From contig OZ249436.1 of the NCBI GenBank assembly GCA_965235115.1, positions 52,328,001 through 52,392,000 of the forward strand: a stretch of DNA of 64,000 nt. The letters are read 5' to 3'. Position numbers and translations under genes: made by a program. This document shows positions 2,630-28,217 of this stretch, piece by piece. The stretch is from Laetmonice hystrix (lineage: Eukaryota). Every line of letters starts with the position of its first letter. The first letter of the stretch is position 1. Under the pieces are notes generated by a model, which had not been told where the DNA came from, searched no databases, and was given only the letters and a program-made list of their open reading frames with translations.

Positions 2630-4744
2630 ATGAACTGGGCCTTCCTCACTCTGGTGGTACACGCCATATTCACTCAACACACAGACGGTGCATTTCAAGG
2701 TAAGCTTTTCATTCATTCTGAGTTCTTTATCTTCTTGTTTGTGCTCTTGTTCTTCGTGTACGTGTTCCTCTTCTTCTTAAAATTGTTCCAGTTGGACAGC
2801 CAATGAAATTCATCGGGCGATGAATATCATTGGCGCTTCTGCAACTGGAATGATGAATTTCATTAAATTTCCCCAGTTCTGTGGGTAAACACTAATTGAT
2901 TTATGTAGTCTAAGAGCTAATCTAACTTAACAACCCAGATCTACATACGAAAAGAGACATCGATTTCGTTTATCTATATGTGCTTGACGTTTTTCGCTGT
3001 GAAACCCCCTCGGACTTTCCTTTTGTTTCGTTTGTATATTTTGTTATTTTATTTTATATATTTTTAATGCTCACAATGTTGCACCACACAGCGAGTTGTG
3101 TTGTACAGTCGTATGTATCCGTTGGCCTACCTGAACGTCTCTTACTGCTGCTCTGTTAAAGCCTATCAGCCCAATGATGAGGGTCGGGTGAGTGTGGGCG
3201 AGTTCCGACCGGAACCTACCGTCGTCTCCAAGGAGTACCAGGCCAGGCATGAACAGTCGACGGATGTCGAGGCTAAGGAAGGTGGTTATGGTTACGGTCT
3301 CAACGGCCACGGGCACGGATACGGAAACGGTGGACGTCATGGAAACGGGAACCGGTACGGGAAGGGCGGCGACGGTGGCCACTTCGGCGGGGTACATGGC
3401 GGAAACTCTCTCGGCAAGGGATTTGGTGGTGATTCCATCAGCAAGAATACTGGCAATGTGTATGTTGGGTACAGCAGTCAATATGGGAGTGGAAGTTACG
3501 GTGGGAATGGACAGATTAGTCACTCGGCCAACAAGGGTCATGAATACAGTGAATACAACACCGACTTTGGAGGTGGTACGTACGGTGTGAGTGGACACGG
3601 AGGTGCTACGTACGGTGTGAGTGGACACGGAGGTGCTACGTACGGTGGGAGTGGACACGGAGGTACTACATACGGTGGGAGTGGACACGGAGGTGGTACG
3701 TCCGGTGTGAGTGGACACGGAGGTGCTACGTACGGTGGGAGTGGACACGGAGGTGCTACGTACGGTGGGAGTAGACACGGAGGTGCTACGTACGGTGGGA
3801 GTGGACACGGAGGTGCTACGTACGGTGGGAGTGCACACGGAGGTGGTACGTACGGTGGGAGTGCACACGGAGGTGCTACGTACGGTGGGAGTGGACACGG
3901 AGGTGGTACCTACGGTGGGAGTGGACACGGTGTGAGTGGACACGGAGGTGCTACGTACGGTGGGAGTGGACACGGAGGTGCTACGTACGGTGGGAGTGGA
4001 CGCGGAGGTGCTACGTACGGTGGGAGTGGACACGGAGGTGGTACGTACGGTGTGAGTGGACACGGAGGCGGCGGAAGTAAAGGAACCTCTACAGGAGGTG
4101 ACCGAGGAGGGAGTCACGCAGGGGGCGGTGGTCATGCTGGCCGCTATGATGGAAGTGGATATGGTAAGGGTGGACACTCAGAACGGGGTGGGCAGGGTGG
4201 TCACCTAGGGAGTGGTCACCTAGGAGGGGATGGACAGGGTGGGCACTCAGGAGGGGATACAGTGGGGACAGGCGCCTTTGTTAAAGGTTATAACTATCGG
4301 GGTTTCTCGACAGGGTCGGGTTATGGTAAAAACGACGGCGGTGCAGTCGGCGGCCATGGAGGTGCGGGTGGATACGAAGGGCGTAGCACACAAGACGGCG
4401 GGCTCATGTGGCTCGGTGGCTCCCATACCCAAGGGAAGGGCGATCATTCGGGCAAAGGCCAGTCGTCCCACGCCTGGAACGGCAAGACCAAACAGGAGTA
4501 CCAAAAGGGGGCTTCAGACACCTACAGCCATGATGGCACGAAAACGAAAAAATACAACTATGGCGGATCTGGCTGGTATAAGGAGACGAGCAAGGGAGAG
4601 GTGACGGGATTAGGGAGCGCTGGAGGCCAAGGCGCATCTAAGTTTGGTGGAGAAAAACATGGCTCCCACAAACGGGTCTTAGATATTAATCACGGCAGCA
4701 AGGACCAAACTGGAGGCCACAAGCATTACTACGGCTACAGTTAA
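2630..4744 (+). CDS. Secreted Gly/His/Tyr-rich structural protein, paralog 1 (550 aa)
   Basis: join(2630..2699,3162..4744). Exon 1 MNWAFLTLVVHAIFTQHTDGAFQ is signal-peptide-like; donor AG|GTAAGC; phase-1 acceptor ttaaag|cc; GGATYGGSGH repeats; 111-aa conserved C-terminal domain; AATAAA at 4831-4836. Confidence 0.85.
3569..4063 (+). repeat. Coding 30-bp tandem repeat (GGATYGGSGH, 16 units plus one half unit)
   Basis: Unit ggaggtgctacgtacggtgggagtggacac repeated in frame within paralog 1 exon 2. Confidence 0.95.
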
Positions 4745-4938
4745 GATAATCATAAGATAATCGGTCACCCAGGAACCTACATTTGTAATGGCATTATGAG
4801 CCGAGTGGGTAATCCTGGTTAATCATGGTTAATAAACAAAATGAAAAAAAAGATGCAACGAATCTAGCCACATTAACGTTATGACCCATGCATGGACTTG
4901 AATTAACAGGTTAGAAAATTAAAGGAACGAAACATCGA

Positions 4939-5202
4939 TGTTCTGTCCCCGACTGCACAGAAAGTATAACCCAACAACAAGCCTCCATTCCAATTGACTT
5001 CTTGGTTTATTAGATGTTTGTCGTGTAGAGGTAAAAAGACTGTACGCGAACCCTAGAGCCGCTTCTCGCCAACTCTCGCTTATTCTCCGAGATTAAAACA
5101 CCGCCATCTAGTGGCCAAAGTCAGAACCCTCAAAAACCAAATCTTCCCCTCCGCCAGAGGGCGCTAAACTAAACTTAAATATATACTAGTACTACCAGCA
5201 CA
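4939..5202 (-). repeat. 3' LTR of the BEL/Pao element
   Basis: Direct repeat of 11586-11849; abuts the polypurine tract. Confidence 0.97.
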
Positions 5203-5446
5203 CTCCCCGTCTGATATCATCACGATATCACCACATATAAAGGAAAATAATAATATGTTACCATGTTCATACAGTAAATATCCTTGTGAATCGTTCTGAC
5301 TGGAACAACAACCAAATTCTCACCTGAGCTCAAGTTACTGATACATCTGTTGATAACTTACAAGCAATAGAGACCAACCTTAATGTTAGACGTTTTGTGT
5401 TTTAAACGAACACTGCTTTTACATGGGTCTGATACAAATGATTAAT

Positions 5447-8400
5447 TTACTCCACCAGTAACACCAAATCTGTAATGGGGCGGGTGTATGTTCGCATTTC
5501 CCCATCTTTCATGATTTTGACACACGCTTTACGCACCTCACCATCGTCACTGGGTAAAGTGTTCACAACAACCGCGAGTGGCCACCAATTTCTAGGAACC
5601 GCATCGTCCTTCATGAGAACAACATCACCTTCTTTGAGGTTTTTTGAGAGTTTTAACCACTTTCGGCGCACTTGGAGTCCCTGCAGGTATCCGACCCGCC
5701 ACTTAGCCCAAAACATGTCCGACAGGACTTGAACACGTTTCCACTGTGCCCGATACATGTCTTTTAGATCATATGAGTCACACATTGGAGGCATAAAATC
5801 GACTTTGCCAGTTAAGAGCATTGATGGGCTTATAACCATGGCTGACCCAGGGTCAGACGAGATCTGACCAAGCGGTCTTGAGTTAATGATGGCAGATACT
5901 TCCGCCATGAATGTTGTCAGACTTTCGTGAGTCAAGAGTTGGTTTCCTGACTCCAGAATGAGCGAGTTTAATATCCGGCGAGTCACACCGATGAGGCGTT
6001 CCCACACTCCTCCCATGTGGGAGCAGTGAGGAGCATTAAAGATCCATTTTGTTCCTAAATCAGTGAGGAAACGTTTGACTGGTGGATCCTCAACATTAAC
6101 AGTGTCAATCTTTAACTCCTCTGCAGCCCCAACAAAGTTTGTGCCCCGATCTGACCGAAACAGTTTTACAGGGCCTCTGAGAGCGAGAAAACGCCTGAGT
6201 GCATTTATGAAGGAGGAGCTACTTAGGTCCTCCACGACCTCTATGTGTACACCCCTTGTTGTCAAGCAGGTGAACAAGATCGCCCACCTCTTACTCTGGG
6301 CGACGCCACCTCGTGTGCGGCGAGTTACAATCTCCCATGGGCCGAATGTATCGACCCCCACGGATGTGAATGGTGGTCCAGGGCTAAGCCTGTCTGTCGG
6401 AAGATCCGCCATTTTTTGATGCAGTGGTTTTCCCCTCAGTCTGCGGCACACAACACAATTTTGGATGAGTGACGTTATCATACGTCTCACACCCACAATC
6501 CAATATCCATTGCCGCGGACCGATCCTTCCGTGAAATGTCTTCCCTGATGTTTCACCAAGCTATGACAATGGCTGATGATGAGACGAGACACATGATGGC
6601 CTTTTGGTAGGATGATCGGGTTAACTTCCTTCGTGGGTTGGGAACCTTTGAGCTTGTTCAATCTCCCCCCGACCCTCAGTAATCCGTTTTCGTCTACAAA
6701 CGGATCCAGTGTCCGGAGCGAACTGTTACGTGGCAGGTCTCTCCCCGCCATGAGGCACTGGACCTCTACCCTGAAAGCATCCCTCTGCACTTCCTTCAGG
6801 ATAAGGATTTCCACATCACACTGCAACTCCTGGCTGGTCATTTTCGAACAGTCGCGCCATCCCCGTGAGGCACATGATTTTGCGGCATGAGACTGTGCAA
6901 CATGTTTTAGAACCGAGAGTGCCCTCACGGCCGCTGTCCAGGTTGAAAACCTCTGAAATCGTTGACTCCCGAGACTGACCCGAGTCTCAGATTTTTTCAC
7001 TTCCACGTGGGGGCGAATTTCCTTGTCGTCATCAGGGTTGAGCAAGGGATAGTTTCCTGGGAAACAGGCATCCTGGGTGGCCTCCTTTCCATGCTGCTTG
7101 GATCCATGCAACCATACTTCCAATTGCTCCAATGTTGAGGTCAAGCATCTCGTACCACAATCGGCTGGGTTGCGGCTGGTTGGCACAAAAAACCATTGTT
7201 CAGGAGAGGCAACCCTTACAATGCGGTCCACGCGGTTACTGACATAGGTATAAAACCGTCGGGTTCTGTTGTTGATATATCCTAAGACGACCTTACTGTC
7301 TGTGTGGTACTTCACGGCAGTGAAGTGTACATCTAGTTGATCCTGTACAGTTTCTGCGATCTCTGTCGCAAGGACTGCCCCACACAATTCCAGGCGAGGA
7401 ATCGTGTGACCTCGTTTGGGAGCTAGCTTTGCTTTTCCCATGATGAATCCCATTTTCTGTTCACCCCTGGTGTCCGTCATTCTGATATATGCCACTGCTG
7501 CTATGGCCTTTTCGGAAGCATCCGAAAACACTAAGAGTTCTATTTGTTGTGCTGTATCAAGTGATTCTGACACGTACATCCTCGGAATCGCAAGTTCCTG
7601 AAGATTTTTCAGCGACGCTTTCCACTCTTCCCATTTCGCTTGACAGGCTGCTGGAAGAGGTTCATCCCAATTTGTGCCCGGAGGCGACGCCTCCCTGAGA
7701 ATGATTTTTCCCTGGATGGTGATTGGAGCAATAAATCCCAGAGGATCGAATACACTGTTTATGGCAGATAGAATTCCACGTCGGGTACACGGCTTGACGT
7801 CTGGCTCATTCTCAAATATGAAGCAGTCAGAATTCAGGTCCCATGACAGACCAAGGCTGTGTTGCAATGGTAAATGCTCTTCACCTATGTTGACGCGTTT
7901 TAGGTCCTTCCCTAGATCCTCTGCTGGGAAAGCTTTCATGACCTGTGAGTCGTTGGATACAATTTTGTGCAACCTGATGTCACCTGATGATGCCAGGGCA
8001 TGCTGAGTGCGCTTCATCAAATCAATGGCTTCCTCACGTGTTGGAAGAGAGACCAGACCGTCATCTACGTAAAAGTTTTTGCTGACCAGCTTTCGTACTT
8101 CATCATCACAAGCTGCTACTGCTCGGCGCAGCCCATAAGTTGCAACTGCCGGCGATGGGCTATTTCCAAAAACATGCACACACATCCGATACTCTGTTAG
8201 AGGCCTATCGGGATCGTTGTTTTGATACCAAAAGAACCTGAGGTAGTCTCTGTGGGCCTCATGGACTCGGAATCGGTAGAACATTTGTTCTATGTCGGCT
8301 GTAACAGCCACGCTATTCTTCCGGAAACGCAGCATTATTCCCGTCAGATTGTTTGTGAGATCAGGCCCACTCATCAGCAAGCTATTGAGGGACACACCCT

Positions 8401-11400
8401 TCGTTGTCGCTGACGAGTCAAATACACCCCTAATCTGATCCGGTTTTCGTGGGTGATATACACCAAAGAGAGGGAGATACCAGCACAGGCCATCAGGGGG
8501 CGTGGATGCTGGCTCAGCTGCACCGCTGTCGATCACCCTACTCATGAATGCGACGAAATGTTCCCTTTTAACCTTGTTTTGCCGCAGGCTGGCATCCAAG
8601 AGTTTAGCCCGCTTCCATGCTTCAGCTTTGTTGTCTGGTAACAACTGTCTAGGCTTTCTGAGGGGTAATGGAGCTGTCCAACGACCTTTTTCATCAATTT
8701 TGAACTCCATGTCCATCAGCTCAACAAATTTCCTGTCCTCCTGAGACAATCCAACTTTCTCATCATCCTTTGTTTTTTGAAATACTGTGTCATCATCATC
8801 TTCTCTTAATGCTTGGGTGTAGATTTTAGACTCTACCTGTTCCTTTAGACTCAGACTTTTCATGCACGGTTCGAAAATAGTCTCACGATTTTCTCCCAAG
8901 ACATGTGTCTTGTTCACACTAATTGAGCTGGGACAGTGAACTTTTCCCAGGCACACTTCCCCGATAATGACCCAGCCTAAGCTCAATCTCTGTGCGAATG
9001 GCATGTTGCTGGGACCGAGTATTTGTTCATGGACATGATGTACATCAGGAATGTCTCTCCCGATTAAGAGCTCGATGTCCACCTTTGGAGCGAGTTTAGG
9101 AATATGTCCGACAAGCCGCTGTAGATGAGAGTAGTGTTCCGCTATTTCTGGAGTTGGTATCTCCGACCTATCATTGGGAATGTGGTCACATTCGATCACA
9201 ACTGGCAAGTTGATGCAAGTATTGTCATGCAGTGATCCCACAGATATCCCTTTCGCACGTCTCGCTGATGCTGTGGTGCTTCCAGCGCAGGTTGATAAGG
9301 TATACTGCACCGGCTCCGTCTGTACATTGAGTTTATCAATCAACTGAGGTGAAGCAAGCGTTCGGTTGCTTTGATCATCTAAGATGGCATACACCTTGAT
9401 TGCCTCCTGTGGCTTCCCTGTAGGGTAGACATTTACCAACACTGTTTTACCACATGACCGTCCCCCAAAGCCATCTCCACACAGTGTCACACAGTTCGAC
9501 GCTAATGTTTCATTTGGAATTTGAGGTTTATCACTATCTCCCCGTTGACTGTGTTTTTCCTCCTGACCTGGACCTGGACCTGGTTTTCCAGCGTGCATGA
9601 CAGATGCGTGACGTGTGCTGCCACAATGTTTACACTTAATGTCCACTGGGCACCTCCGCGCCATGTGTTTAGACGATACACAGCATTTGAAGCAAATGTT
9701 ATTGTCTTTCAGGATTTTGCGGCGCTCTTCTAATGACTTAGCTTCAAACGCTCTACACTCACTCAAGGCATGGTTGGATTTGTGGATGGGGCACTTGTCA
9801 CTTGCTGAACTTGCTCCTGTCTCCTCAGTTTCTGTCTTTCGGCTTACGAACGTAGTTGTCCTGGTTGTGCCCTTTGATGCATTGTTTTTATTTACAGGTG
9901 CTGTGTCATACGCGAAAGCAGGATCATTTTTAACAGCACTGATTTCCCGGATGTAGTCAACAAAGAAGGAGAAAGGAGGAAATGGTACCTTGTAATAGCG
10001 CTTGTAATTGAAGGCCGTCGATGTCCATTTTTCCTGCAACCCATATGGCAACTTGTTTACCACCGATAATATGCCTGGTGATGTATCAAACTGTGCGAGC
10101 GGAGCACCATACTGGGGGTCCTCTTTGACCGACTCGATCACCGTGAGAATGTCCAGTAAATCATACAGTTTCAGAGAATCACGATTTGTAAGTTTTGGGA
10201 AACTGTCAAGTTTTGCTGTGAGTGAGGCTAGGACCATCTCAGGTCGACCATACCGTTCATTCAGTCTTTCCCAGATCAGGAAAACACCCCTGTGAGGATT
10301 GTTCATGTTTGAAGCCTTGATGCTTTGGGCAAACCGAGATGATTCAACCCCTAACCATTTTACTAACAAGTCTATCTCTTCACTGACAGTGACATTCAGC
10401 TCTTTCACCACACTACTGAAGCTATACTTCCATGCTGAGAATGACTCGGGACAGTCATCAAATTTTGTGAGCCTGGTTAAGAGTAACTCCTTTTTGAGTA
10501 AGAACTGGGTAAAAACTGATGGGTCTTGGTATACTTGCCCTACATTTTGAGTCTCAAGTTTGAAGGTTGGTGCATTTGGGTTGAGAGTATTTTCAGCTGC
10601 AGGTGTAGCCCTACTTGTGATTTTTCCTTCAAACTTCATGCCCTGGAGATTCGCCTTATGATCCCCCAAAGCTGGTCGATGTCCCTGTCCAACGGGCGGT
10701 TGTGATTGTGGGTTGGGTTGTGGGTCCAACCCTCCTGTGGTGGAGTATGCAAGGAGGTCACTAGGTGCGACAGATGCTGCACTGGCCTGTTGAATGTGAC
10801 TGTGAGAGTCCATAGCTGCTTGCTGTTGAATGCGACTGTGAGAGTCCATAGCTCCTTGCTGTTGAATGCGACTGTGAGAGTCCATAGCTCCTTGCTGTTG
10901 AATGCGACTGTGAGAGTCCATAGCTCCTTGCTGTTGAATGCGACTGTGAGAGTCCATAGCTCCTTGCTGTTGAATGCGACTGTGAGAGTCCATAGCTCCT
11001 TGCTGTTGAATGTTACTGTTAGAGTTCATAGCTGCTTGCTGTTGAACGTAACTCTGTGTTAATTCCAATTTGTTGGCTTGTACAGACGTTTGTTCCAGTA
11101 CAGGAGGAGGAGAACTGGTTACTGAACGTGGACAGCTTAATTCCTCCAGTACTCGTACCTCTGCCTCTGCTGCAGCTAACTCTGTCTGATGTTTTAGTAG
11201 TAATATCTCAGCGTCAATTTCTGCCCCTTGCCTGTCCTTCTCAGCCTTTTGTTTTAGCAGGCCTGCTTGTTTTTCACAGAACCGAAGCCGCGCACGTTCT
11301 GCTTCTACCTTAGCACGTTTGCAAGCTAGAACCATACTACTTGCCTTCGAGCTGGTGATCGACAGTTTGGAGCAGTTTGACTTGGTTTCCTCGGCGTCTA

Positions 11401-11479
11401 GGCTTAAACCACGTCCCTTTCCCGTGTTGACGCACGTGTTGTCAGTCTCGGGGGCCGAGACAGCAGCGTGGTCCGCCAT
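5447..11479 (-). CDS. BEL/Pao Gag-Pol polyprotein (2010 aa)
   Basis: Three Cys/His knuckles (CPIHKSNHALSEC, CFKCCVSSKHMARRC, CKHCGSTRHASVMH); protease AILDDQSNRT; RT ADIEQMF and FYVDDGL; Pao-type RNase H VFSDASE, IPRLELC, NPADCGTR; integrase HHCC finger plus VDTFGP/SDRGTNF/GVWERL; C-terminal WPLAVV region. Confidence 0.97.
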   Translation of the reverse strand: MADHAAVSAPETDNTCVNTGKGRGLSLDAEETKSNCSKLSITSSKASSMVLACKRAKVEAERARLRFCEKQAGLLKQKAEKDRQGAEIDAEILLLKHQTELAAAEAEVRVLEELSCPRSVTSSPPPVLEQTSVQANKLELTQSYVQQQAAMNSNSNIQQQGAMDSHSRIQQQGAMDSHSRIQQQGAMDSHSRIQQQGAMDSHSRIQQQGAMDSHSRIQQQAAMDSHSHIQQASAASVAPSDLLAYSTTGGLDPQPNPQSQPPVGQGHRPALGDHKANLQGMKFEGKITSRATPAAENTLNPNAPTFKLETQNVGQVYQDPSVFTQFLLKKELLLTRLTKFDDCPESFSAWKYSFSSVVKELNVTVSEEIDLLVKWLGVESSRFAQSIKASNMNNPHRGVFLIWERLNERYGRPEMVLASLTAKLDSFPKLTNRDSLKLYDLLDILTVIESVKEDPQYGAPLAQFDTSPGILSVVNKLPYGLQEKWTSTAFNYKRYYKVPFPPFSFFVDYIREISAVKNDPAFAYDTAPVNKNNASKGTTRTTTFVSRKTETEETGASSASDKCPIHKSNHALSECRAFEAKSLEERRKILKDNNICFKCCVSSKHMARRCPVDIKCKHCGSTRHASVMHAGKPGPGPGQEEKHSQRGDSDKPQIPNETLASNCVTLCGDGFGGRSCGKTVLVNVYPTGKPQEAIKVYAILDDQSNRTLASPQLIDKLNVQTEPVQYTLSTCAGSTTASARRAKGISVGSLHDNTCINLPVVIECDHIPNDRSEIPTPEIAEHYSHLQRLVGHIPKLAPKVDIELLIGRDIPDVHHVHEQILGPSNMPFAQRLSLGWVIIGEVCLGKVHCPSSISVNKTHVLGENRETIFEPCMKSLSLKEQVESKIYTQALREDDDDTVFQKTKDDEKVGLSQEDRKFVELMDMEFKIDEKGRWTAPLPLRKPRQLLPDNKAEAWKRAKLLDASLRQNKVKREHFVAFMSRVIDSGAAEPASTPPDGLCWYLPLFGVYHPRKPDQIRGVFDSSATTKGVSLNSLLMSGPDLTNNLTGIMLRFRKNSVAVTADIEQMFYRFRVHEAHRDYLRFFWYQNNDPDRPLTEYRMCVHVFGNSPSPAVATYGLRRAVAACDDEVRKLVSKNFYVDDGLVSLPTREEAIDLMKRTQHALASSGDIRLHKIVSNDSQVMKAFPAEDLGKDLKRVNIGEEHLPLQHSLGLSWDLNSDCFIFENEPDVKPCTRRGILSAINSVFDPLGFIAPITIQGKIILREASPPGTNWDEPLPAACQAKWEEWKASLKNLQELAIPRMYVSESLDTAQQIELLVFSDASEKAIAAVAYIRMTDTRGEQKMGFIMGKAKLAPKRGHTIPRLELCGAVLATEIAETVQDQLDVHFTAVKYHTDSKVVLGYINNRTRRFYTYVSNRVDRIVRVASPEQWFFVPTSRNPADCGTRCLTSTLEQLEVWLHGSKQHGKEATQDACFPGNYPLLNPDDDKEIRPHVEVKKSETRVSLGSQRFQRFSTWTAAVRALSVLKHVAQSHAAKSCASRGWRDCSKMTSQELQCDVEILILKEVQRDAFRVEVQCLMAGRDLPRNSSLRTLDPFVDENGLLRVGGRLNKLKGSQPTKEVNPIILPKGHHVSRLIISHCHSLVKHQGRHFTEGSVRGNGYWIVGVRRMITSLIQNCVVCRRLRGKPLHQKMADLPTDRLSPGPPFTSVGVDTFGPWEIVTRRTRGGVAQSKRWAILFTCLTTRGVHIEVVEDLSSSSFINALRRFLALRGPVKLFRSDRGTNFVGAAEELKIDTVNVEDPPVKRFLTDLGTKWIFNAPHCSHMGGVWERLIGVTRRILNSLILESGNQLLTHESLTTFMAEVSAIINSRPLGQISSDPGSAMVISPSMLLTGKVDFMPPMCDSYDLKDMYRAQWKRVQVLSDMFWAKWRVGYLQGLQVRRKWLKLSKNLKEGDVVLMKDDAVPRNWWPLAVVVNTLPSDDGEVRKACVKIMKDGEMRTYTRPITDLVLLVE
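10788..11047 (-). repeat. Coding 36-bp tandem repeat in gag (QQQGAMDSHSRI, ~7 units)
   Basis: Seen directly in the DNA and in the ORF translation. Confidence 0.95.
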
Positions 11480-11574
11480 TGTGGTTTTCTCGACGTCTAG
11501 CTTTTTAAACCATGTCCCTTTTCCGTGTTGACGCCCGTGTTGTCAGTCTCGGGCTGAGACAGCAGCGTGTTCGT

Positions 11575-11585
11575 AGTCTTTTTAC
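11575..11585 (-). other. Non-tRNA primer-binding site GTAAAAAGACT (element sense) abutting the 5' LTR
   Basis: Lacks the TGG start of a tRNA PBS; exact reverse complement of LTR positions 11678-11688. Confidence 0.75.
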
Positions 11586-11849
11586 TGTTCTGTCCCCGAC
11601 TGCACAGAAAGTATAACCCAACAACAAGCCTCCATTCCAATTGACTTCTTGGTTTATTAGATGTTTGTCGTGTAGAGGTAAAAAGACTGTACGCGAACCC
11701 TAGAGCCGCTTCTCGCCAACTCTCGCTTATTCTCCGAGATTAAAACACCGCCATCTAGTGGCCAAAGTCAGAACCCTCAAAAACCAAATCTTCCCCTCCG
11801 CCAGAGGGCGCTAAACTAAACTTAAATATATACTAGTACTACCAGCACA
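11586..11849 (-). repeat. 5' LTR of the BEL/Pao element
   Basis: Direct repeat of 4939-5202; AATAAA in element sense at 11658-11653. Confidence 0.97.
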
Positions 11850-12035
11850 ATCGATGCACTTAATTATTAGTTTACGAGAAGAAAAGAAATTGAGTTTACT
11901 GCCGTGCATTGCTGATCGTTGCGCGACGTCGTGATGGGACGACTCCATGATATACGACTTCTCCATAGGGACGGTCTCTATCTCCGACAGAGTATTACTG
12001 GCTATATGAACTTATATTGTTAATCAGTTGGATGG

Positions 12036-14641: not shown

Positions 14642-16054
14642 ATGAAGCCGCATCCATTTCTACTGCTCGCGCTGGTGACATTCACCATAGGCGAACCTAT
14701 AGGTACATAATTCCTTTTTCCGTCACGCCATATTCACATGCAATCGTCACTTTTGGGGGAGCTGGGGCAATTTAGGAACTGAACTATAAGCTTTAATGTA
14801 CGTGAAATCGTCAAAATCCCACATGGTTAAATTGAATTTTATATTTTTGTACTGATGGGCATCTACATGGAGCGATTAATTAATCTTGCCATATTCAAAA
14901 GCGGCTACCTATACACCATGAGCAAACACCATCCACCTCTCTCAGAAACGCTTTCATGCAGTGTTGGATCCCCGCCTGGATGAAGGTGACTTGTCTAACT
15001 AGACCTCACTGCCTTGAATCGTTGTACAAACCTTAGAAACATCATCCTATGTTATCTTATTGTTACAGTGAATAACCGCGTAGACGCTGGAGGGGATGTA
15101 GCGAAGGAGGTGGAGGGCAAGAGTGGTTACGGCGGACACTATGGCGGGTACGGCCTTGGCCACGGACATGGTGGTCACTATGGCGGACACGGTGGTCACT
15201 ACGGCGGACATGGTGGTCTCTACGGCGGACACGGTGGTCACTACGGCGGACACGGTGGTCACTACGGCGGACATGGTGGTCTCTACGGCGGACATGGGGG
15301 TCACTACGGCGGACACGGTGGTCACTACGGCGGGCATGGTGGTCACTACGGCGGACACGGTGGTCACTACGGCGGACACGGTGGTCACTACGGCGGACAT
15401 GGTGGTCACTATGGCGGACATGGTGTAGGTCACGGCGGAGGGTATGGACACTATGGGCATGGCCACGGTCACGGCGGTCATGGTTACGGAAATGGTCACT
15501 ACGGTGTCGGCCATGGTGGTTACGGTTACGGACACGGTCACGGTAGTCTACACCATGGAAGTGGACATCATCACGGCGGTGGCGGCTACGATTACGGAAA
15601 CAATCAGGCTCACCACGGGGGTCACAAAGACAGCTACCACCACGACAACCATAAGGTTGGATCACATGGAGGTCATGGTTCACATCAAGGAGGTAGCAAA
15701 CATGACGGAGGGGACCAGTGGTACGGGGGAAGTCACAGTAAGGGACATGGCGGCGAGTCCGGCCATGGTCACGCCGACCAAACCTGGAACGGGAAGAGCC
15801 AAGAAGGGTATCACAAGGGGGAAGAAGACAAGTACAGCCACTATGGGACGAAGACGAAAAATTACCATTATGGAGGAGCCGGCTGGTACAAGGAGAACAG
15901 TCAAGGTCATGTAACCGGCCAGGGTCACGCGGGCAAGCACGGTACCGGACATTTCGGTGGGCACAAACACGCCAATAAATACGAGCAGGCCAACAATCAT
16001 TACGGCAACCAACAGAAGGCAAGCGGTCACAAACAGTACTACGGCTACAACTAA
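14642..16054 (+). CDS. Secreted Gly/His/Tyr-rich structural protein, paralog 2 (348 aa)
   Basis: join(14642..14702,15069..16054). Signal-like MKPHPFLLLALVTFTIGEPI; donor AG|GTACAT; phase-1 acceptor gttacag|tg; GGHYGGH repeats; 111-aa C-terminal domain; AATAAA at 16106-16111. Confidence 0.87.
15170..15421 (+). repeat. Coding 21-bp tandem repeat (GG[H/L]YGGH x12)
   Basis: Twelve in-frame units; Leu variants at units 3 and 6 suggest a 63-bp higher-order duplication. Confidence 0.95.
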
Positions 16055-18991: not shown

Positions 18992-21532
18992 ATGAAACCA
19001 ACTAGTCTGATCGTGTTGGCTCTGGTCGTATTAACCCAGGATGTCTTCAGTCGAGAGCTTATTCGAGGTAAGTCCAATGGGCCGGTTGATTGTAAATGCT
19101 GTCATATATCATAGTTGAATGATTCTTTTTTTTGAAATATGAAAAAGATTCCACGGTCTAATTCAAGTAAATATGGTAGGTCTATACAAAGGACGGTGGG
19201 TAAATTACTTTGAGACGTTTGTTCATTATCTGCAGTAAACGGGTTGGTCTCTCCAAACGTGTATTTAAAAAAGTTCAGAAAACGAAAAAAAAGTTTGATT
19301 ATTTGTCACGTAGAAAATATAGATAGCTTTTGCCTGGGTTAGTGAAAAAAAGGTTTCTTTATTGAAACCATAGCCTCCGCCCGTATCCAATGGTCCAGCC
19401 CTTATATTTATTAGTCAATACATGAAATATTTGGCTCGATTTTACAAATTGAAATGGGCAAATCAGCAACGTTTCTTTCCGTTCGTTAACACTGACCAGA
19501 TACAGCAGGAAGACAACATACCAAATGGGATTTATCCGCACTCCAGAATATTTCTAATTGACAAAAAGGGGCACGTTTTGTATCTAACGCCACCTAATCA
19601 CATCGGGGTAGGGGGTGCCNNNNNNNNNNNNNNNNNNNNNNNNNNNNNNNNNNNNNNNNNNNNNNNNNNNNNNNNNNNNNNNNNNNNNNNNNNNNNNNNN
19701 NNNNNNNNNNNNNNNNNNNNNNNNNNNNNNNNNNNNNNNNNNNNNNNNNNNNNCTGTTGTCTCCTGGACCACTTTGGAACCTTATCGTTGAATGAGCAAG
19801 TGTTAGCTGTCCCATACTGCGTCTGCAATCTGCAAGGCGAACACCAGAGTACCGCAAAACAGACAAAGGGGCCCATTGTCCCCGGATCCCCTCGAGAAGT
19901 GAATACTTGGGAGCTGAGTCCACTGATCCCAGAACCTCTCTATTATCATCTTATACTTGGGAGCTGAGTCCACTGATCCCAGAACCTCTCTATTATCATC
20001 TTATACTTGGGAGCTGAGTCCACTGATCCCAGAACCTCTCTATTATCATCTTATACTTGGGAGCTGAGTCCACTGATCCCAGAACCTCTCTATTATCTTA
20101 TACTTGGAAGCTGAGTCCACTGATCCCAGAACCTCTCTATTATCATCTTATACTTGGGAGCTGAGTCCACTGATCCCAGAACCTCTCTATTATCATCTTA
20201 TACTTGGGAGCTGAGTCCACTGATCCCAGAACCTCTCTATTATCATCTTATACTTGGGAGCTGAGTCCACTGATCCCAGAACCTCTCTGTTATCCGCTTC
20301 ATGTTTTATATGTAAATGTTTGTCACTTACTTGCTGCAAGGTCGATGGTTTCCTCGGGTACTCGGGTTCCGCCAACTGTCAAACTGACCGCCTTGATATA
20401 TCACTGTCTGTTACGAAGGCATAACGGTATCTCCGATCCCAATTCTGATTCCAATCACACGAAATCGATCTATATGATCTAACCGGGATGAGCTGGAGTT
20501 GAGGGATAATCTGTAATTGATTGATGACCCATATAACAAAGGTCTTTGCAAGTTTCATCAGTGGTTTATGTCAGTGGTTAGGGAGGCAGTGGGGGTTAAT
20601 AGGTCTGATTACGCAAATGGCCTCAAACTTTTGGATCATTTACAAATAATTATTCCAAGTCTGTTTGGCTGGTCCATCACAGGCAGCTCAAGCTTCAGTA
20701 ATCTTGAACTTAACTTTTTAACATTGTGTAGAGGGCTCGCAAAACCAGCCCCTCATTTAATTTAGAAGCAGTTTAGAGGGGTGCACGGGTAGGCTCCCTC
20801 CCTCCCTGCCTCGCTCCCTCGCTCCCTCCCTCCCTCCCTCCCTCCCTCCCTGTTGCGACGGACTCATGTCAGTGACACTGAGCCTACTTCACGTCTTCAG
20901 AGTCTGAGTGTGCATTTCAACCACCTCTCTAACCGAAACATCGAAATCGTAGGATATGCTTACCTGTCTAGGATCCATCAGAGAACAAGCACCTCACATT
21001 GTGCAGAATTCCTTTAACGGCTGGTGCCCACTCTAGCATTATCGGTTTCCTTCCACTCCCAAGACTTTCAAACTTTGGAATCGTAACGATTCATGCAACC
21101 TCTCGAATTCTGGTGGACGTTATCGTGAGCCGTGGCCACAAAGGTTGGCGCCTGAATTATTCTATCCAAGCGCGTTGAAGGCGTCACCTAGTGGAATTAC
21201 TAGAAGGCATGTACTCCGTGCTGACAACTTGGCGTACAGGTGGCGCCACCGTCTATTATCGCTAGTTGTATTGAATATGCTAAAAGCTAGAATGTCTTAT
21301 CGGCTTCACTTAGTTTCATGTGACATCGCTTGCAGCATCTGGATATTATGTCTGTTTGAACTTAAGGGTTAAAGGGGTAATTTTACTTGATAATTCACAG
21401 TGGTCATCAATGGGCACATCAGCAGCCAGACCGCAACTGGCATAGGCTACTACTAAGACGCCATCTGTCGATACAACTTCCCCACTGACTTAGGAGTCTC
21501 CCCCTGTCTCTCTGTCTCTGTCTGTCTGTCTA

Positions 21533-21598
<66 letters not shown>

Positions 21599-22452
21599 GG
21601 GGGGGGGGGTAGGGGGTGGCGGGATTAAACCCCTTTGCCATCCTGCCATGCCCATATAACCTGAATTGGGAGAATCATATTGTGGGGGTTCTGCAAGAAC
21701 TCCTTCACAGCTCTGATGTAGTGACTTATCTAGTCCACATCACTGCATGCTAAAACAGTAAATGGTCCGTAGAGTTTACACTGATGGGTCTTTGTTGCTG
21801 TGTTCCAGGGTATGATGCCTACGACAATGGCAGGGACTACAACAGAGGATATATTGTGGGCGACACTGCCGTCAACGCGGTGAGAGAAGAGGAGGTTGAG
21901 GGAAAGGCGGGCTACGGTCACGGTTACGGTGGCCACGGCGGTGGTCATCACGGCGGTCACGGCGGTCATCATGGCGGCGGCCACTACGATCACGGTCATC
22001 AGGAATCACACCACGGCCATGATCACGGCGGACACTCCCACGGCGAACACGGCGGCGGTCATCACGGCGGCCACGGTCAACACGAAGGTGGGGAGAACTT
22101 TGACGGCGCCGTCAAGTGGCACGGATCGCATCACGGTCAGGGCAGCGGCAAGGGCGGCGGTCACGGGCACTTCGGGAAACACTGGGAGGGCAAGGACCAC
22201 GGAGGCTTCAAAAAATCCGGCCACGACCAATACCACCATCACGGACATAAGGAAAAGCATTACCACTACGGGGGCTCGGGATGGTACAAGGAGGTCTCTA
22301 AGGGCCAGGTTCATGGTCATGGAAACGCAGGAGGTCACGGTCATGGCCACTTTGGAGGTCACAAGCACGGCAAAGATCATCACCAAGGTCATGACCACCA
22401 TGGACATCATGGGCACACTGGCGGCCACAAACAGTACTACGGTTACAATTAA
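18992..22452 (+). CDS. Secreted His/Gly-rich structural protein, paralog 3 (239 aa)
   Basis: join(18992..19067,21809..22452). Signal-like MKPTSLIVLALVVLTQDVFSRELIR; consensus donor AG|GTAAGT; phase-1 acceptor ttccag|gg; 111-aa C-terminal domain. The intron spans an N gap. Confidence 0.85.
19620..19753. other. Assembly gap (N run)
   Basis: Run of n characters. Confidence 1.
19903..20294. repeat. 50-bp minisatellite, ~8 copies (one 47-bp variant)
   Basis: Unit atacttgggagctgagtccactgatcccagaacctctctattatcatctt repeated head to tail with no spacers. Confidence 0.95.
20250..20430 (+). mobile_element. Degenerate invertebrate SINE (V/Meta-domain-like body)
   Basis: gtttgtcacttacttgc...aggtcgatggtttcctcgggtactcgggttcc...aaactgaccgcc resembles the widespread mollusc-type SINE core; recognised from memory, not searched. 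Confidence 0.55.
20795..20850. repeat. (CCCT)n microsatellite
   Basis: Direct inspection. Confidence 0.9.
21505..21596. repeat. Compound (TCTG)n/(TC)n microsatellite
   Basis: Direct inspection. Confidence 0.95.
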
Positions 22453-23774: not shown

Positions 23775-23933
23775 NNNNNNNNNNNNNNNNNNNNNNNNNN
23801 NNNNNNNNNNNNNNNNNNNNNNNNNNNNNNNNNNNNNNNNNNNNNNNNNNNNNNNNNNNNNNNNNNNNNNNNNNNNNNNNNNNNNNNNNNNNNNNNNNNN
23901 NNNNNNNNNNNNNNNNNNNNNNNNNNNNNNNNN
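23775..23933. other. Assembly gap (N run)
   Basis: Run of n characters. Confidence 1.
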
Positions 23934-26241
23934 GTTGGCAGTAAACTTTCCCCAACTGACCAGTGCCGTAAAACTAGATGAGATGTCATCTAAACATGAC
24001 AGCACAAACATTCCATTAATTCTTGAATTAGTTCGTTGTCGCCTCCGTATAATGACCTGTAGGTGTTAGTGTAGTGTTAAAGCAGAGTGTCGAACCAGTG
24101 TGGGATTATCCCGATTTTGCTTGAAAATCCCGAATCCCGACGCAACCTTTGAATTCTAATTCGCATTGGCGTCGCTTAGAATATCGTCTGTGTGGGACCC
24201 TGTAGAGGAACGCCGGCCATCTTTGTGATTTGTCTCTGTCTAGGGTGACCTATGCCGCCCGACTCTCACGCTTTATAAAGATACACTCCTTAAAACAAAT
24301 TTAATCTTCTCCAACCTCCGGTTGCTAAAGAGAAGCATTTATATTAGAAGGGAATACTTGACCCGAACATCGTTTAACGACTTACTGCCGGTCCACATTA
24401 AACATTAACGACCTATCTGAGCTAACGGCAACAACTTTAGGCGAACGTGCAGGACATAATCAAATTCCAGTTGAAAGGTAACGTTATCAGTCTGCTCTGA
24501 AAGGTCATGTGGGGTTCAGTGTCAGACAGGTGTTGTGCGGGTAACGTACGCCGGTCAGTGACGTGCCCGTCAATCACGCGTCGCCATGTGTCAGTTTGGA
24601 AACCTTCAGTCAGGACAACGTTTCACCTCGGATCCTGTCGCTCCAATCCGAAGTACAGCAACGAGCGCAGAAATATTTACAAGCCATCAACACGCCAAAA
24701 TGGACCGTGATCGATACATAATTATATTCACGACATACATCATTTGTGTAGCCAAAATATCGCCCAACGGGTCAACTGCACGATAAAAATACTCTTGGTA
24801 AATAAAAGTGTTATGCTAAATACCGTTTTGTGAATAATTTCTTTTTTTTAAGTGTGTGCCATTATGCATAGATGCATTCCACGAGAGACGAAAGGGTTCA
24901 GTATAGATAATTAGTGGACAGAATGTAGATGATCTACATCGTGTTAAGTACTTTGGTCACTGTCCACTTTAAATTTTAGGCACGTGATGCAAGTCTTTCA
25001 GAAATGATAAAAGTGTTTGTGTTGTCTCATATCAATCTCCAAATAATGTACAGAGAGACTTCGCTGGTGAAAATAAAAACCTTGATACTGACAGCAACTG
25101 TTTGGGAGGCGTTTTATGGCTTATGGTACGAAATTTGTTGAATCGAAAAAGAGCATGGGCTCTACAGAGAAAAACTTGGCATAGTGTGTATCAAAAACGG
25201 TAGTCCCAAACGACAACTTATTATTCATGAACTTTGTACCTTCTGATTATCTTCAACCACAAAAACTATGGTGATGAAATTATTCACTTTATGGCTGTTA
25301 GTTCTCTTCAATAAGACAAAAACAAAGCAAAAAAGATGGAGATAAAAATGGTGATGGAATTATTCACTTTGTGGCTGTGAGTCCTCTTCATTAAAAAAAC
25401 ATGGAGAAACAAATATTTATTTTGTGGCTCTTAGTTTGTGGCTCCATAGAGACGAAAATATTCAAATTATTTATCGCCAAAATGTTATAGAGATGAAATT
25501 ATTCACTTTGAACCGCAATCTCTCTTTAACCTACAACACCCATGGAGATGACCTTTATTTATGTTTTCTGCTGGTAATTGCCATGATGGTGGCTGATAGT
25601 TATTGAATGTGATGTCCCATCCATTGGATCATAACCCAGACTTGTCAGCACTAAGCTTTGAACTTTATCTTAAAAAAAAACGATTCTGCAGCAGTCTTAT
25701 AACTAAGGAAACACAAACGAAAATTGCAAGCGAGCGAAAGCAGAAAGTTCAGCAGATCGTTCAAAACTTTTGTCACTAGCCCATTATATCTGGATTTCTT
25801 TGCACGTGCGATTTCAGAGCGTTCTAAGCTATATGGTCTGGTTGGAATGTTGAGTGAACCCTAAGAAAAAGATAACATAGGTACATTAATCTGATTCAAT
25901 TTGGTTTAGGCGATCTCTGGAATGATCACGTTGGTGATTATTCATAAATAGTCAGTCTATCCGCAGTACAGGGTGTTCATAAAGACGTTAAATAGGTGCT
26001 CTGTCAAATCTACTGACATTTAAATTATCATTTCAAGTGTTATACATTTGTCTGTGGTTCCCATGGGCTTGTAGGTTCCCAGATCGCTAACGGACAGTCT
26101 GACTGACCGACACTCCCTCTCAGGCTCAGTCACCAGGAAACGGCGAGACAGAAAAACACGCCCGCGTGAATCAACGTGACGAAAGGTTCCGTGTCTCCAG
26201 TTCTGATTGGACAAACCAGCCGACTGCCCATCTTATGTTCG

Positions 26242-26250
26242 TATATAAAG
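26242..26250 (+). promoter_or_regulatory. TATA box of paralog 4
   Basis: TATATAAAG about 190 bp upstream of the ATG at 26437; reverse CCAAT (ATTGG) at 26206-26210. Confidence 0.6.
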
Positions 26251-26436
26251 CAGGACGGTTGACTTCTCAAGACAACTTGGCTGAGTCCTTCCACAGTCCA
26301 CAGCAAGGAGATACACGGGACTATTTTAGTGACAGGAGGCAGTGTAGTTCAGAAGGAGAACTTACAGGAGGAAAGTTACCTGGGAGATACCGTGCTCGTT
26401 TAGTTATCAGCTCCTGGCGGGAGCAGCAAAGCCAGG

Positions 26437-28217
26437 ATGAAGGCCTTTAGTTTGATTTTGGTGGTGGCTTTCTACGGCCGCCATGTGTTTACTAGGGACC
26501 TCGGCCGGGTAGAAGGTAGGTACTCACTTGAGTATAGAAACTGTTGTCCTAATGTCCCAACCCAGACGGGGGGGGCGATACGTCCACGTCAAAATCTACC
26601 TTGCCACAAGCTTTGCTCTAACGAAATCAGAAAAAAGTTGGACCCTTCTTCTGTTATTCTCGTTATTGTGTTGTAGCTTTTTGAAGTAGGCCTACAAAGG
26701 TATTTATTTTCTGGACTGAACTGAATTGGTATGAAATTCCTGTCTTATAACTGTAGGGCCTATTGTAATTCGGATCGCTCTGGTTCAAAATGGTGCCCTA
26801 GATAGTTTTGGCAGCTACGCTTTACGTCTACTTTACTGCAAGCTCAACATTGCCCATTTTACAATCAGTCAATCAGGAGGAAATCCATATTTCAGGTCAC
26901 TCGTAACGTCATTATCATAAATGAAACTCTTAGGTTCTTGGCCATCTTAATGTCAAGATGGTCAAGGAAAGGTATAAATTTATGTTGTATGAGGGCTAAT
27001 CGTAGTCACCAAAACAATCAGCAACTTTGGAAGTCCTTAAGTTGTATAGGCAACTACGGGCATCTTCTTGGCAGATATAAAGATTTGAAAACGGAAACGT
27101 TAATTAACAGAATATAGCGTAAGTAGAATCCCAAGGGAATTGTGGTTAAAATTTGGATATGGGCTTAATTATCTCCGGGGCCCAATGTTCATTTAAAGGA
27201 AGCCATTGCGAACAATGTTGAGAAGTATCAAATGCTAATTTTCTCTCCTGAAAGGATGAAGGACCTGAAAAAAAGACACTCCTACCTTTGGCTTGCGGCC
27301 AATTGCTATCTGTTTACTCTTGTTCGTGACGGTTTCCTTTGCCTTGAAAAATATTTAACTTTGCTTACTACAAAACGTGACAATCAGTGTTGGTTTACTA
27401 GTAGAGAAAATCTTTTTTTCTATGTCCTTCACGCTATCGGGTATAGACAAACTTCAGTTGGTTTCCACAATGTATCCTTCTAATCTAAGACTTTTCCAAT
27501 CAGTTTTTCGATAAACCATCACAGAGTAATGTCACTCTGGTCAATTCAATTGCAGGCTACGAGGCTGGTGAGGTCGGAGGCCAAGCAATCTTCGACCATA
27601 GTGAAAACGCTCCCTATCGCGAAGCCGACAATCGTTTCCCAGCTGCAACGGAAGTGGAATATAAGCCAAAAGTGGAAGGCAAGGACGGGTACTCCGGTGG
27701 TTACGGGGGTCATCACGGCGGTCACGGCGGTCATCATGGCGGCGGCCACTACGATCACGGTCATCAACAATCACACCACGGCCATGATCACGGCGGACAT
27801 TCCCACGGCGAACACGGCGGCGGTCATCACGGCGGCCACGGTCAACACGAAGGTGGGGAGTCGTACGACGGCGCCGTCAAGTGGCACGGATCGAATCACG
27901 GTCAGGGCAGCGGCAAGGGCGGCGGTCACGGGCACTTCGGGAAACACTGGGAGGGCAAGAAGCATGATGGATTTAAAGCGGCCGGCCACGACCAATATCA
28001 CCATCACGGACATAAGGAAAAGCATTACCACTACGGGGGCTCGGGATGGTACAAGGAGGTCTCTAAGGGCCAGGTTCATGGTCATGGAAACGCAGGAGGT
28101 CACGGTCATGGCCACTTTGGAGGTCACAAGCACGGCAAAGATCATCACCAGTCTCATGACCACCATGGAAATCACGGGCACACTGGCGGCCACAAACAGT
28201 ACTACGGTTACAACTAG
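26437..28217 (+). CDS. Secreted His/Gly-rich structural protein, paralog 4 (246 aa)
   Basis: join(26437..26515,27556..28217). Signal-like MKAFSLILVVAFYGRHVFTRDLGRVE; donor AG|GTAGGT; phase-1 acceptor ttgcag|gc gives an open frame GYEAGEVGG... into ORF 27654-28217; about 95% DNA identity to paralog 3 over the last 507 coding nt. Confidence 0.87.

What the first reader, a model, noticed from the sequence alone, without database searches (positions are those of the whole stretch)
4409..28214. Gap-free 111-residue C-terminal domain with strict two-residue periodicity: possible ultra-long beta-hairpin
Seen: from the first conserved Trp to the C-terminus, all four proteins are exactly 111 aa with no indels (4409-4741, 15719-16051, 22117-22449, 27882-28214), and contain no Pro or Cys. 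Invariant residues fall mostly on odd positions (W1 G3 G9 G11 G15 G17 W23 G25 D37 Y39 H41 G43 K45 K47 Y49 Y51 G53 G55 Y57 E59 S61 G63 V65 G67 G69 A71 G75 F79 G81 K83 G103 K105 Y107 G109). Folding at the YGG(S/A)GW turn (centre 54) pairs Y51/Y57, H41/G67, Y39/G69, W23/G85 (A in paralog 2) and W1/Y107, an aromatic-over-Gly pattern. Paralogs 3 and 4 also show a 60-aa internal repeat (GHGHFG-x4-GKDH twice). Inference: a single long beta-ribbon (~54 residues per strand, roughly 18 nm) that self-assembles into sheets or fibrils, and an unnamed domain family.
Basis: partly seen in the sequence, partly recalled or inferred. Interest (0 to 1): 0.85.

Follow-up and report, generated by a model that had tools for sequence, protein, structure and literature searches.

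The report
Conserved tail of histidine-glycine worm proteins
A tandem cluster of secreted glycine/histidine/tyrosine-rich proteins in a probable annelid worm genome shares an unnamed, never-gapped tail of about 111-125 residues, conserved at every second position; this suggests beta structure around a central hairpin, but nothing supports the proposed single 18-nm hairpin.

Summary
The four 111-residue tails translate as described, align without gaps and lack Pro and Cys. The genome holds 11 tandem paralogs, all with a tail of the same length. Relatives in at least two other genomes (P0001; L012, L016-L018) are also gap-free at 35-50% identity. Both assembly gaps lie outside coding sequence: one in the paralog 3 intron, one intergenic. 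The genes have two exons (signal peptide, then the rest); the paralog 2 intron is confirmed by a spliced contig.

Conservation has a period of 2.02 residues (invariant columns 16 odd, 3 even). Non-synonymous change is 2-3 times lower at odd positions. Gly and aromatics sit on odd positions, His/Gln/Asn on even ones. The signal is concentrated in residues 37-71, around the YGG(S/A/H/K)GW turn, and absent in 27-36 and 84-102.

The single hairpin of about 54 residues per arm is not supported. Its register (i+j=108) ranks 10th of 40. AlphaFold2 is low-confidence (pLDDT 32-39) and draws only about 14 residues per arm. One lineage has Pro at position 93. There is no Pfam (including DUF4779) or PDB match, and the Nereis jaw protein (Nvjp-1) module is absent.

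Best reading: a new lineage-restricted, beta-prone C-terminal assembly or anchoring module of His/Gly-rich structural proteins. Function and fold are untested.

The parts
2630..2699 (+). Paralog 1, exon 1: signal peptide (MNWAFLTLVVHAIFT...), phase-1 GTAAGC donor
   Evidence: inferred from sequence, no RNA support for this copy
3162..4744 (+). Paralog 1, exon 2: about 25 GG(A/G)TYG(G/V)SGH decapeptide repeats, then the conserved tail. Full protein 550 aa (G 36%, H 8%, Y 8%).
4409..4741 (+). Paralog 1, 111-residue C-terminal domain
14642..14702 (+). Paralog 2, exon 1: signal peptide (MKPHPFLLLALVTFTIG...)
   Evidence: The splice to 15069 is confirmed by a contig of run X4 that skips 366 bases with GT..AG ends.
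15069..16054 (+). Paralog 2, exon 2: GGHYGGHG octapeptide repeats, then the conserved tail. Full protein 348 aa (G 38%, H 20%, Y 11%).
15719..16051 (+). Paralog 2, 111-residue C-terminal domain
15827..15931 (+). Paralog 2, domain residues 37-71: the most strongly periodic core (D-x-Y-x-H-x-G-x-K-x-K-x-Y-x-Y, the GGAGW turn, then Y-x-E-x-S-x-G-x-V-x-G-x-G-x-A). This is the proposed central hairpin.
18992..19067 (+). Paralog 3, candidate exon 1: signal peptide (MKPTSLIVLALVVLT...), phase-1 GTAAGT donor. It is separated from exon 2 by an intron that contains the assembly gap.
   Evidence: linkage across the gap unverified
19620..19753 (.). Assembly gap inside the putative intron of paralog 3; non-coding
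21809..22452 (+). Paralog 3, exon 2. Full protein 239 aa (G 31%, H 24%).
22117..22449 (+). Paralog 3, 111-residue C-terminal domain
23775..23933 (.). Assembly gap, intergenic between paralogs 3 and 4
26437..26515 (+). Paralog 4, exon 1: signal peptide (MKAFSLILVVAFYG...), phase-1 GTAGGT donor
27643..28217 (+). Paralog 4, exon 2. Full protein 217 aa (G 30%, H 24%).
27882..28214 (+). Paralog 4, 111-residue C-terminal domain

Best explanation
The window holds four of eleven tandemly duplicated two-exon genes for secreted Gly/His/Tyr-rich, Cys-free proteins of a probable annelid. Each protein has three parts: a signal peptide; a repeat region whose length and repeat type differ between paralogs; and a non-repetitive C-terminal module. 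The module is the 111 residues from W1, plus about 14-24 conserved residues before it.

Shown: the module is under purifying selection. Its length is fixed even where its sequence is free. Constraint falls on every second residue, with one face of Gly plus Tyr/Trp/Phe/Lys and the other face of variable His/Gln/Asn/Lys.

Inferred: the core (residues 37-71) is a beta-hairpin of about 15 residues per arm, turning at YGG(S/A/H/K)GW. Aromatic side chains would lie over cross-strand glycines. The flanking Gly-rich segments and the GGHKQYYGYN end would pack against the hairpin, so that the two ends of the module meet. That would explain why the unconserved stretch 84-102 never changes length.

Inferred function: an ordering, assembly or anchoring module for a histidine-rich structural material. 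The conserved Gly/aromatic face would make the protein-protein or protein-scaffold contact. The His-rich face and the N-terminal repeats would supply pH- and metal-dependent (Zn or Cu) cross-links. By analogy this resembles the conserved terminal domains of silk proteins attached to a worm-jaw-like composition.
For: - Gene models are complete, in frame and carry signal peptides. The paralog 2 intron is confirmed by a spliced contig. A near-identical copy outside the window (L003) sits under a contig of depth 157 in a run that behaves as RNA.
- There are 11 tandem paralogs.
- No indel in 11 paralogs plus P0001, L016 and L017. L012 and L018 have the domain split by introns and show no indel in the aligned pieces. 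The N-terminal parts meanwhile range from about 85 to 420 residues.
- dN/dS is 0.09-0.27 where dS can be estimated. dN at odd positions is 2-3 times lower than at even positions in every divergent pair. Gly is 37% at odd vs 14% at even positions; His is 7% vs 27%.
- Period 2.02; invariant columns 16 odd to 3 even.
- In one lineage the last exon starts 14 residues before W1, so the module is a discrete unit.
- Both AlphaFold2 runs place strands on both sides of the 52-55 turn.
- Composition (G 30-38%, H 8-24%, Y 6-11%) matches known metal-hardened worm-jaw proteins. Recombinant Nvjp-1 is reported to switch to beta-sheet at seawater pH and to form fibrils with Zn (PMC9999432 section 3.4.1.2).
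Against: - AlphaFold2 pLDDT is only 32-39, and ESMFold2 gives 26-27, so no fold is actually predicted.
- With 25-30% Gly and almost no aliphatic residues, the module looks like a disordered protein.
- There is no tissue, proteomic or metal data. The 'structural material' role rests on composition, secretion signal and gene-family behaviour only.
- The only RNA evidence is one small run of unknown tissue.
- Covariation is underpowered with about 9 independent sequences.
Confidence: 0.45

Rival explanations
1. One reading: the whole 111 residues form one two-stranded beta-ribbon, about 54 residues per strand and about 18 nm long, folded at residue 54, which stacks into sheets or fibrils.
For: The conserved phase is the same (odd) on both sides of the turn and at both ends, as an even i+j register requires. 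The unconserved stretch 84-102 keeps its length in all sequences, which fits the two ends having to meet. AlphaFold2 does draw a hairpin at this turn.
Against: The register i+j=108 is not distinguished from other even registers (rank 10 of 40, z 0.6). There is no periodic constraint in 27-36 or 84-102. Conserved GG doublets at 72-73 and 80-81 suggest further turns. One lineage has Pro at position 93. AlphaFold2 strands stop after about 14 residues and both models break the arms. The homodimer job gave no verdict. No isolated two-stranded ribbon of this length is known to me to be stable alone (own knowledge).
Confidence: 0.07
2. The tail is intrinsically disordered. The Gly-X alternation would be a relic of an ancestral (Gly-X)n repeat. 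The conserved Tyr, Lys, His and Trp would be 'stickers' for coacervation and for oxidative or metal cross-linking, without a defined fold.
For: All structure predictors give very low confidence. The composition resembles Nvjp-1, Glycera MTP and squid beak proteins, which are described as disordered and phase-separating (PMC9465683; PMC6884462, listed). Gly accounts for much of the parity signal.
Against: Disordered regions normally tolerate indels. Here none occurs in more than 13 sequences at 35-50% identity, while the adjacent repeat regions vary several-fold in length. Non-Gly conserved columns also favour odd positions, 13 to 4. The profile does not hit other Gly/His-rich proteins among 1.84 billion, so the signature is sequence-specific and not merely compositional.
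Confidence: 0.25
3. The module is a polysaccharide-binding (chitin-binding) beta-sheet. It would play the role of the Rebers-Riddiford domain of arthropod cuticle proteins, anchoring the His/Gly-rich region to chitin in chaetae, cuticle or jaws.
For: Conserved Tyr and Trp alternate with small residues on one strand face (Y39, Y49, Y51, W56/Y57, W1, W23, Y107). This is the pattern of aromatic platforms in carbohydrate-binding sheets (own knowledge). The architecture, a low-complexity Gly/His region plus one compact conserved module, parallels arthropod cuticle proteins (PMC9999432).
Against: There is no Pfam match to Chitin_bind_4 or to any carbohydrate-binding family. There is no structural model to inspect and no localisation data.
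Confidence: 0.13
4. The family is a set of Gly/His-rich immune effectors or antimicrobial proteins, not a structural material. This would compare with sea-urchin SpTransformer genes: clustered, two exons, leader in exon 1, Gly-rich and His-rich regions.
For: The genes are two-exon, tightly clustered, rapidly duplicating and vary in repeats, as described for SpTransformer (PMC5491942 abstract).
Against: The C-terminal module is strongly conserved across lineages, not diversified. There is no sequence similarity to any known antimicrobial family.
Confidence: 0.07

Closest known systems
Nereis jaw proteins Nvjp-1 / Nai11527 family (Zn-binding histidine-rich jaw structural proteins)
   Same: Secreted annelid proteins with 30-38% Gly, up to about 25% His and many Tyr. 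They carry GH, GGH and GYGGH-type repeats and form a multi-gene family.
   Different: The Nereis sequences printed in the paper contain no Trp and end in GH repeats, without the YGGSGWYKE ... YYGYN tail. Their own conserved module (GKFxSHYxYKGYD...) was not found in this genome. The profile of the worm tail did not retrieve them. They share a kind of material, but homology is not shown.
Glycera jaw multi-tasking protein (MTP)
   Same: A Gly/His-dominated secreted annelid protein; metal (Cu) coordination and phase separation.
   Different: MTP is 49% Gly and 40% His, has no Tyr and no non-repetitive terminal domain according to the review.
Spider silk spidroin C-terminal domain (functional analogy only)
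   Same: A variable-length repetitive core joined to a conserved non-repetitive C-terminal module of about 100 residues that is kept across paralogs. In silk this module controls assembly (own knowledge).
   Different: The spidroin C-terminal domain is a helical bundle dimer (own knowledge). This module is Gly/aromatic-rich with beta-type periodicity and has no Pfam match.
Squid histidine-rich beak proteins (HBPs)
   Same: GHG-x-Y-type repeats resemble the GGHYGGHG repeats of paralog 2. In HBPs such repeats drive pH-dependent coacervation (PMC6884462, listed).
   Different: I know of no conserved Trp-containing terminal domain in HBPs. They are mollusc proteins, and no sequence match was found.
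Arthropod DUF4779 (PF16009), 'histidine-rich glycoprotein-like'
   Same: It is the nearest set of clusters by language-model features (score 0.78-0.82, 102-106 of 256 features). These are short secreted His/Gly-rich proteins.
   Different: No HMM match, even at E 10, for any of 14 family members. The feature score is in the range that shuffled sequences reach a third of the time.

Membership tests
Nvjp-1 / Nereis jaw protein family | Secreted, Gly- and His-rich with Tyr, GH/GGH/GYG repeats | tested here: met
   Signal peptides; G 30-38%, H 8-24%, Y 6-11%; repeats visible
Nvjp-1 / Nereis jaw protein family | Shared conserved non-repeat module (GKF-x-SHY-x-YKGYD...YG..G.Y) seen in all printed Nereis aibuhitensis Nvjp-1-like sequences | tested here: not met
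   The module is absent from the four proteins. A 62-aa query found nothing in the own genome (one query only, so 'not found with this query').
Nvjp-1 / Nereis jaw protein family | Located in Zn-rich jaw tip | not testable with these tools
   No tissue-resolved data; the one RNA-like run has unknown tissue
Pfam PF16009 DUF4779 | Match to the family HMM at or near the gathering score | tested here: not met
   No hit at E<=1 for full proteins, nor at E<=10 for 14 aligned tails
Pfam PF00379 Chitin_bind_4 (Rebers-Riddiford) | Match to the family HMM | tested here: not met
   No Pfam hit of any kind
Pfam PF05474 Semenogelin | Match to the family HMM; 60-residue repeats | tested here: not met
   The worm profile gives a summed weak hit to a semenogelin (P0002: E 2.7e-12 with A1; only 0.016 with the broader A4, each repeat insignificant). 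The Semenogelin HMM does not hit the worm proteins. The 60-residue self-repeat is not significant.
   The register i+j=108 is not distinguished. AlphaFold2 draws only about 14 residues per arm at pLDDT under 50.

The most novel reading that the evidence does not exclude
The module of about 125 residues is a new fold-level unit. It would be a Gly/aromatic-faced, His-backed beta module whose ends meet, which switches on with pH or Zn/Cu and templates ordered sheets of a histidine-rich hard tissue. That would make it the first 'terminal control domain' found for a metal-hardened, non-mineralised animal material, comparable in role to the terminal domains of silk proteins.
Probability: 0.15. Interest if true: 0.75.

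Novelty: new variant of a known kind. Interest (0 to 1): 0.45.

Why it matters
Histidine/glycine-rich proteins of worm jaws, squid beaks and arthropod tools serve as models for hard, light, metal-cross-linked polymers. They are usually treated as featureless disordered chains. Here a family of that composition carries a discrete, strongly constrained, length-invariant terminal module with a clear beta-type signature. If the module nucleates or anchors assembly, it would give a defined handle for studying, and for engineering, how such materials become ordered. It is also a family with no name in any library searched, limited so far to a few unannotated invertebrate sequences.

Tried and rejected
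- Word-indexed protein searches with the tails of paralogs 2 and 3 found nothing. The third allowed search was not spent.
- AlphaFold2 on two targets with 14- and 12-row alignments gave pLDDT 32 and 39. No usable fold resulted.
- Foldseek against the PDB and the shape search of the ESM Atlas with the better model gave no match at E<=0.001 and only generic beta rows. These are meaningless at this confidence.
- Complex prediction on a homodimer of the 135-residue tail returned no answer: score 0.00, controls not run, and my alignment was not used. This is neither for nor against self-association.
- The PDB sequence profile search gave nothing at E 10.
- The 60-residue internal duplication is rejected as a family-wide feature (P about 0.33 with parity-preserving shuffles).
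- The specific register i+j=108 is rejected as evidence. Mutual information was highest for i+j=106 (z about 2.2 among 40 registers), which is what the maximum of 40 would give by chance.
- Hits P0002 (a semenogelin), P0003 (a phage-tail-like protein with K-x-Y-R-Y-x-G-S-x-W repeats), P0004 and P0005 are rejected as relatives. They are repeat-summed weak motif matches.
- Both run searches listed no run recorded as RNA. One small run nevertheless behaves as RNA.
- A motif search of the paper library (YGGSGWYKE and others) gave no paper.
- Species identity could not be established with these tools. 'Annelid' rests on other agents' unchecked notes.


Full report
**1. The observation**

They align in 111 columns without a gap, at 49-51% identity between the three types; paralogs 3 and 4 are 94% identical. 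None has Pro or Cys.

Of the 46 columns invariant among the four, 34 are odd and 12 even.

The two assembly gaps were checked first.
- 19620-19753 lies between the candidate signal-peptide exon of paralog 3 (18992-19067) and its main exon (21809-22452). It is therefore inside an intron, and the exon linkage across it is unverified.
- 23775-23933 is intergenic.
- No coding sequence touches a gap, and nothing was filled in.

**2. The genes**

Each paralog is a two-exon gene. Exon 1 is short (61-79 bases) and encodes a signal peptide. It ends in phase 1 at a GT donor. Exon 2, after a pyrimidine-rich AG acceptor, encodes everything else.

All four models are in frame without stops and give proteins of 550, 348, 239 and 217 residues. 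Composition is 30-38% Gly, 8-24% His and 6-11% Tyr, with no Cys. All three Trp lie in the tail.

For paralog 2 the intron is confirmed directly. A contig of run X4 joins 14700 to 15067, skipping 366 bases with GT..AG ends. X4 has no depth in the intron or the flanks, so it behaves as an RNA run although its kind is not on record.

The deep X4 contig (depth 157) over the tail runs on into the 3' flank of a 99%-identical copy, L003, which lies outside the window. That copy, not paralog 2, is the highly represented one. The tissue is unknown.

**3. The family**

The window's genome (627 Mb, 35 contigs) has 11 copies in one head-to-tail array of about 72 kb on the + strand. Seven lie upstream of or overlap the window start.

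The N-terminal parts differ greatly. They include GG(A/G)TYG(G/V)SGH decapeptides, GGHYGGHG octapeptides, short GH-rich stretches and, in L011, a charged Arg/Pro/Tyr-rich extension of about 400 residues. The last 111 residues nevertheless align without any gap.

About 20 residues before W1 are also conserved (G-x-HGG-x-G-x-HEGG-x-x-YDG), so the module is nearer 125-135 residues.

Outside this genome, an exhaustive profile search of 1.84 billion representatives found only three true relatives, all unnamed singletons.
- P0001 (482 aa) is L011-like, and its tail is exactly 111 residues.
- P0006 and P0007 are mispredicted fragments.
- The P0007 locus (L012) has the whole domain split by an intron at about residue 40, with no indel in the two aligned pieces.

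A scan of metagenome records added three more loci of that second lineage. In L016 and L017 the tail is one exon, again 111 residues without a gap at 38% identity. That exon starts 14 residues before W1. In L018 the tail is split by introns.

The module is therefore a discrete, old, length-invariant unit, present in at least three genomes.

**4. The periodicity**

On a non-redundant 9-row alignment:
- invariant columns split 16 odd to 3 even (p 0.004);
- columns at 85% or more split 27 to 6 (p 0.0003);
- non-Gly columns alone split 13 to 4 (p 0.05).

The conservation profile has its Fourier maximum at period 2.02. Where dS can be estimated, dN/dS is 0.09-0.27. In every divergent pair, dN at odd codons is two to three times lower than at even codons.

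Odd positions carry Gly (37%) and Tyr/Phe. Even positions carry His (27%), Gln and Asn.

The signal is not uniform.
- It is near-perfect in 37-71: D-x-Y-x-H-x-G-x-K-x-K-x-Y-x-Y, then GG-x-GW, then Y-x-E-x-S-x-G-x-V-x-G-x-G-x-A.
- It is weaker in 1-26, 72-83 and 103-111.
- It is absent in 27-36 and 84-102.

The stretch 84-102 is poorly conserved yet never changes length. This is most simply explained if the conserved C-terminal cap must reach a fixed partner elsewhere in the module (inference).

**5. The proposed fold**

The aromatic-over-glycine pairs produced by folding at residue 54 are real but not diagnostic. Aromatics and Gly share the odd positions, so any even register gives such pairs. 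The register i+j=108 ranks 10th of 40 (z 0.6).

Mutual information cannot discriminate with so few sequences. The 60-residue self-similarity is not significant once parity is preserved.

AlphaFold2 gave pLDDT 32 for paralog 2 (135 residues) and 39 for paralog 1 (111 residues).
- The second model draws strands at 19-23, 38-51, 55-68 and 76-86.
- The first draws strands at domain positions 36-41, 45-50, 57-60, 64-68 and 74-78.

Both agree on a hairpin at the YGG-x-GW turn, but with at most about 14 residues per arm and at a confidence where nothing can be claimed. ESMFold2 gave pLDDT 26-27, and the homodimer job gave no verdict. Fold searches were empty.

Three further points argue against uninterrupted 54-residue strands:
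- conserved GG doublets at 72-73 and 80-81;
- Pro at position 93 in the second lineage;
- the two aperiodic segments.

My reading is a central hairpin with flanking segments packing back on it. The long ribbon is not excluded, but I rate it at about 7%.

**6. Comparison with known families**

There is no Pfam family at E 1 for the proteins or at E 10 for 14 tails. This includes DUF4779 and the Rebers-Riddiford chitin-binding domain. There is no PDB sequence relative. DUF4779 clusters are the nearest by language-model features, but at scores (0.78-0.82) that shuffled sequences often reach.

The obvious comparison is the Nereis jaw protein family. The Nvjp-1-like sequences printed in the supplement of PMC13120676 share the composition. 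However, they contain no Trp, end in GH repeats, and carry a different conserved module. That module was not found in this genome with one 62-residue query.

This is therefore a different family of the same kind of protein. According to the review PMC9999432, recombinant Nvjp-1 goes from coil to beta-sheet at seawater pH and forms fibrils with Zn, and Glycera MTP phase-separates with Cu. This makes a pH- or metal-triggered beta transition a reasonable expectation for these proteins too, but it is untested.

Other agents of this scan take the genome for an annelid, probably a polychaete. I could not check this.

**7. Verdict**

The 'unnamed domain family' claim is supported. The beta-type constraint is real, and a central hairpin is plausible. 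The single 18-nm hairpin and the self-assembly claim are unsupported.

I classify it as a new variant of a known kind: His/Gly-rich secreted structural proteins, here with a conserved terminal module. Interest is moderate, because both function and fold remain inference.

Noticed in passing
window 5447-11479 (-): An intact 2010-residue ORF of a BEL/Pao-type retrotransposon lies between paralogs 1 and 2. Pfam finds Pao peptidase A17 (E 7e-48), RVT_1, integrase H2C2 and DUF5641. I only describe it here.
   Followed up: partly
G000:C1:52308773-52309105 (L003), outside the window: A 99%-identical copy of the paralog 2 tail, with a different N-terminal repeat region and a different 3' flank. In run X4 the contig of depth 157 continues into this copy's flank, so it appears to be the strongly transcribed member.
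   Followed up: partly
window 21939-22451 vs 27704-28216: Paralogs 3 and 4 are alignable at the DNA level only over 513 bases of coding sequence (94.5%). Their introns, exon 1 and flanks do not align. This fits gene conversion or selective retention confined to the coding part.
   Followed up: partly
P0002 (a semenogelin, Pfam PF05474 E 5e-186): The worm-tail profile gives a repeat-summed weak match to the 60-residue repeats of a mammalian semenogelin (HYGENGVQKDVSQS vs HYGGSGWYKEVSKG). Semenogelin is, from my own knowledge, a Zn-binding gel-forming protein. Each repeat is individually insignificant, so this is probably chance or convergence.
   Followed up: partly
P0003 residues 380-770: A bacterial or phage tail-like protein with six repeats of D-x-K-(I/L)-Y-R-(Y/W)-x-G-S-x-W-T matches residues 45-77 of the tail. 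The Y-x-Y-x-G-S-x-W motif recurs in unrelated proteins.
   Followed up: no
L012 5090-7177 and 7612-7998: In the second lineage, the gene next to the tail-bearing gene encodes a 695-residue protein with a long Ser/Tyr/Pro-rich low-complexity region. A GGYGGHGGGH-rich exon lies between the two. This may be another cluster of secreted low-complexity proteins.
   Followed up: no
window 41185-41877 (-): An intronless 230-residue Ras-family small GTPase ORF (Pfam Ras, E 5e-37).
   Followed up: partly
window 60169-60951 (-): A 260-residue ORF with a CAF1-p150 C-terminal region match (PF15539, E 4e-10). It is probably one exon of a chromatin assembly factor 1 large-subunit gene.
   Followed up: no
window 3071-4177 (-), 15047-15541 (-), 15063-16022 (-) and other frames over the repeats: Long antisense and off-frame ORFs (Thr/Ser/Val-rich, Arg/Asp/His-rich) overlap the Gly/His repeat regions. 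They are by-products of the codon repeats, not genes.
   Followed up: no
window 15223-15500: Short-read contigs of runs X1-X3 break or carry alternative letters inside the GGHYGGHG repeat array of paralog 2 (depth holes at 15294-15364; 40 extra letters at a back-joint 15532->15471). The repeat number there may vary between alleles or copies, or may be imperfectly assembled.
   Followed up: no
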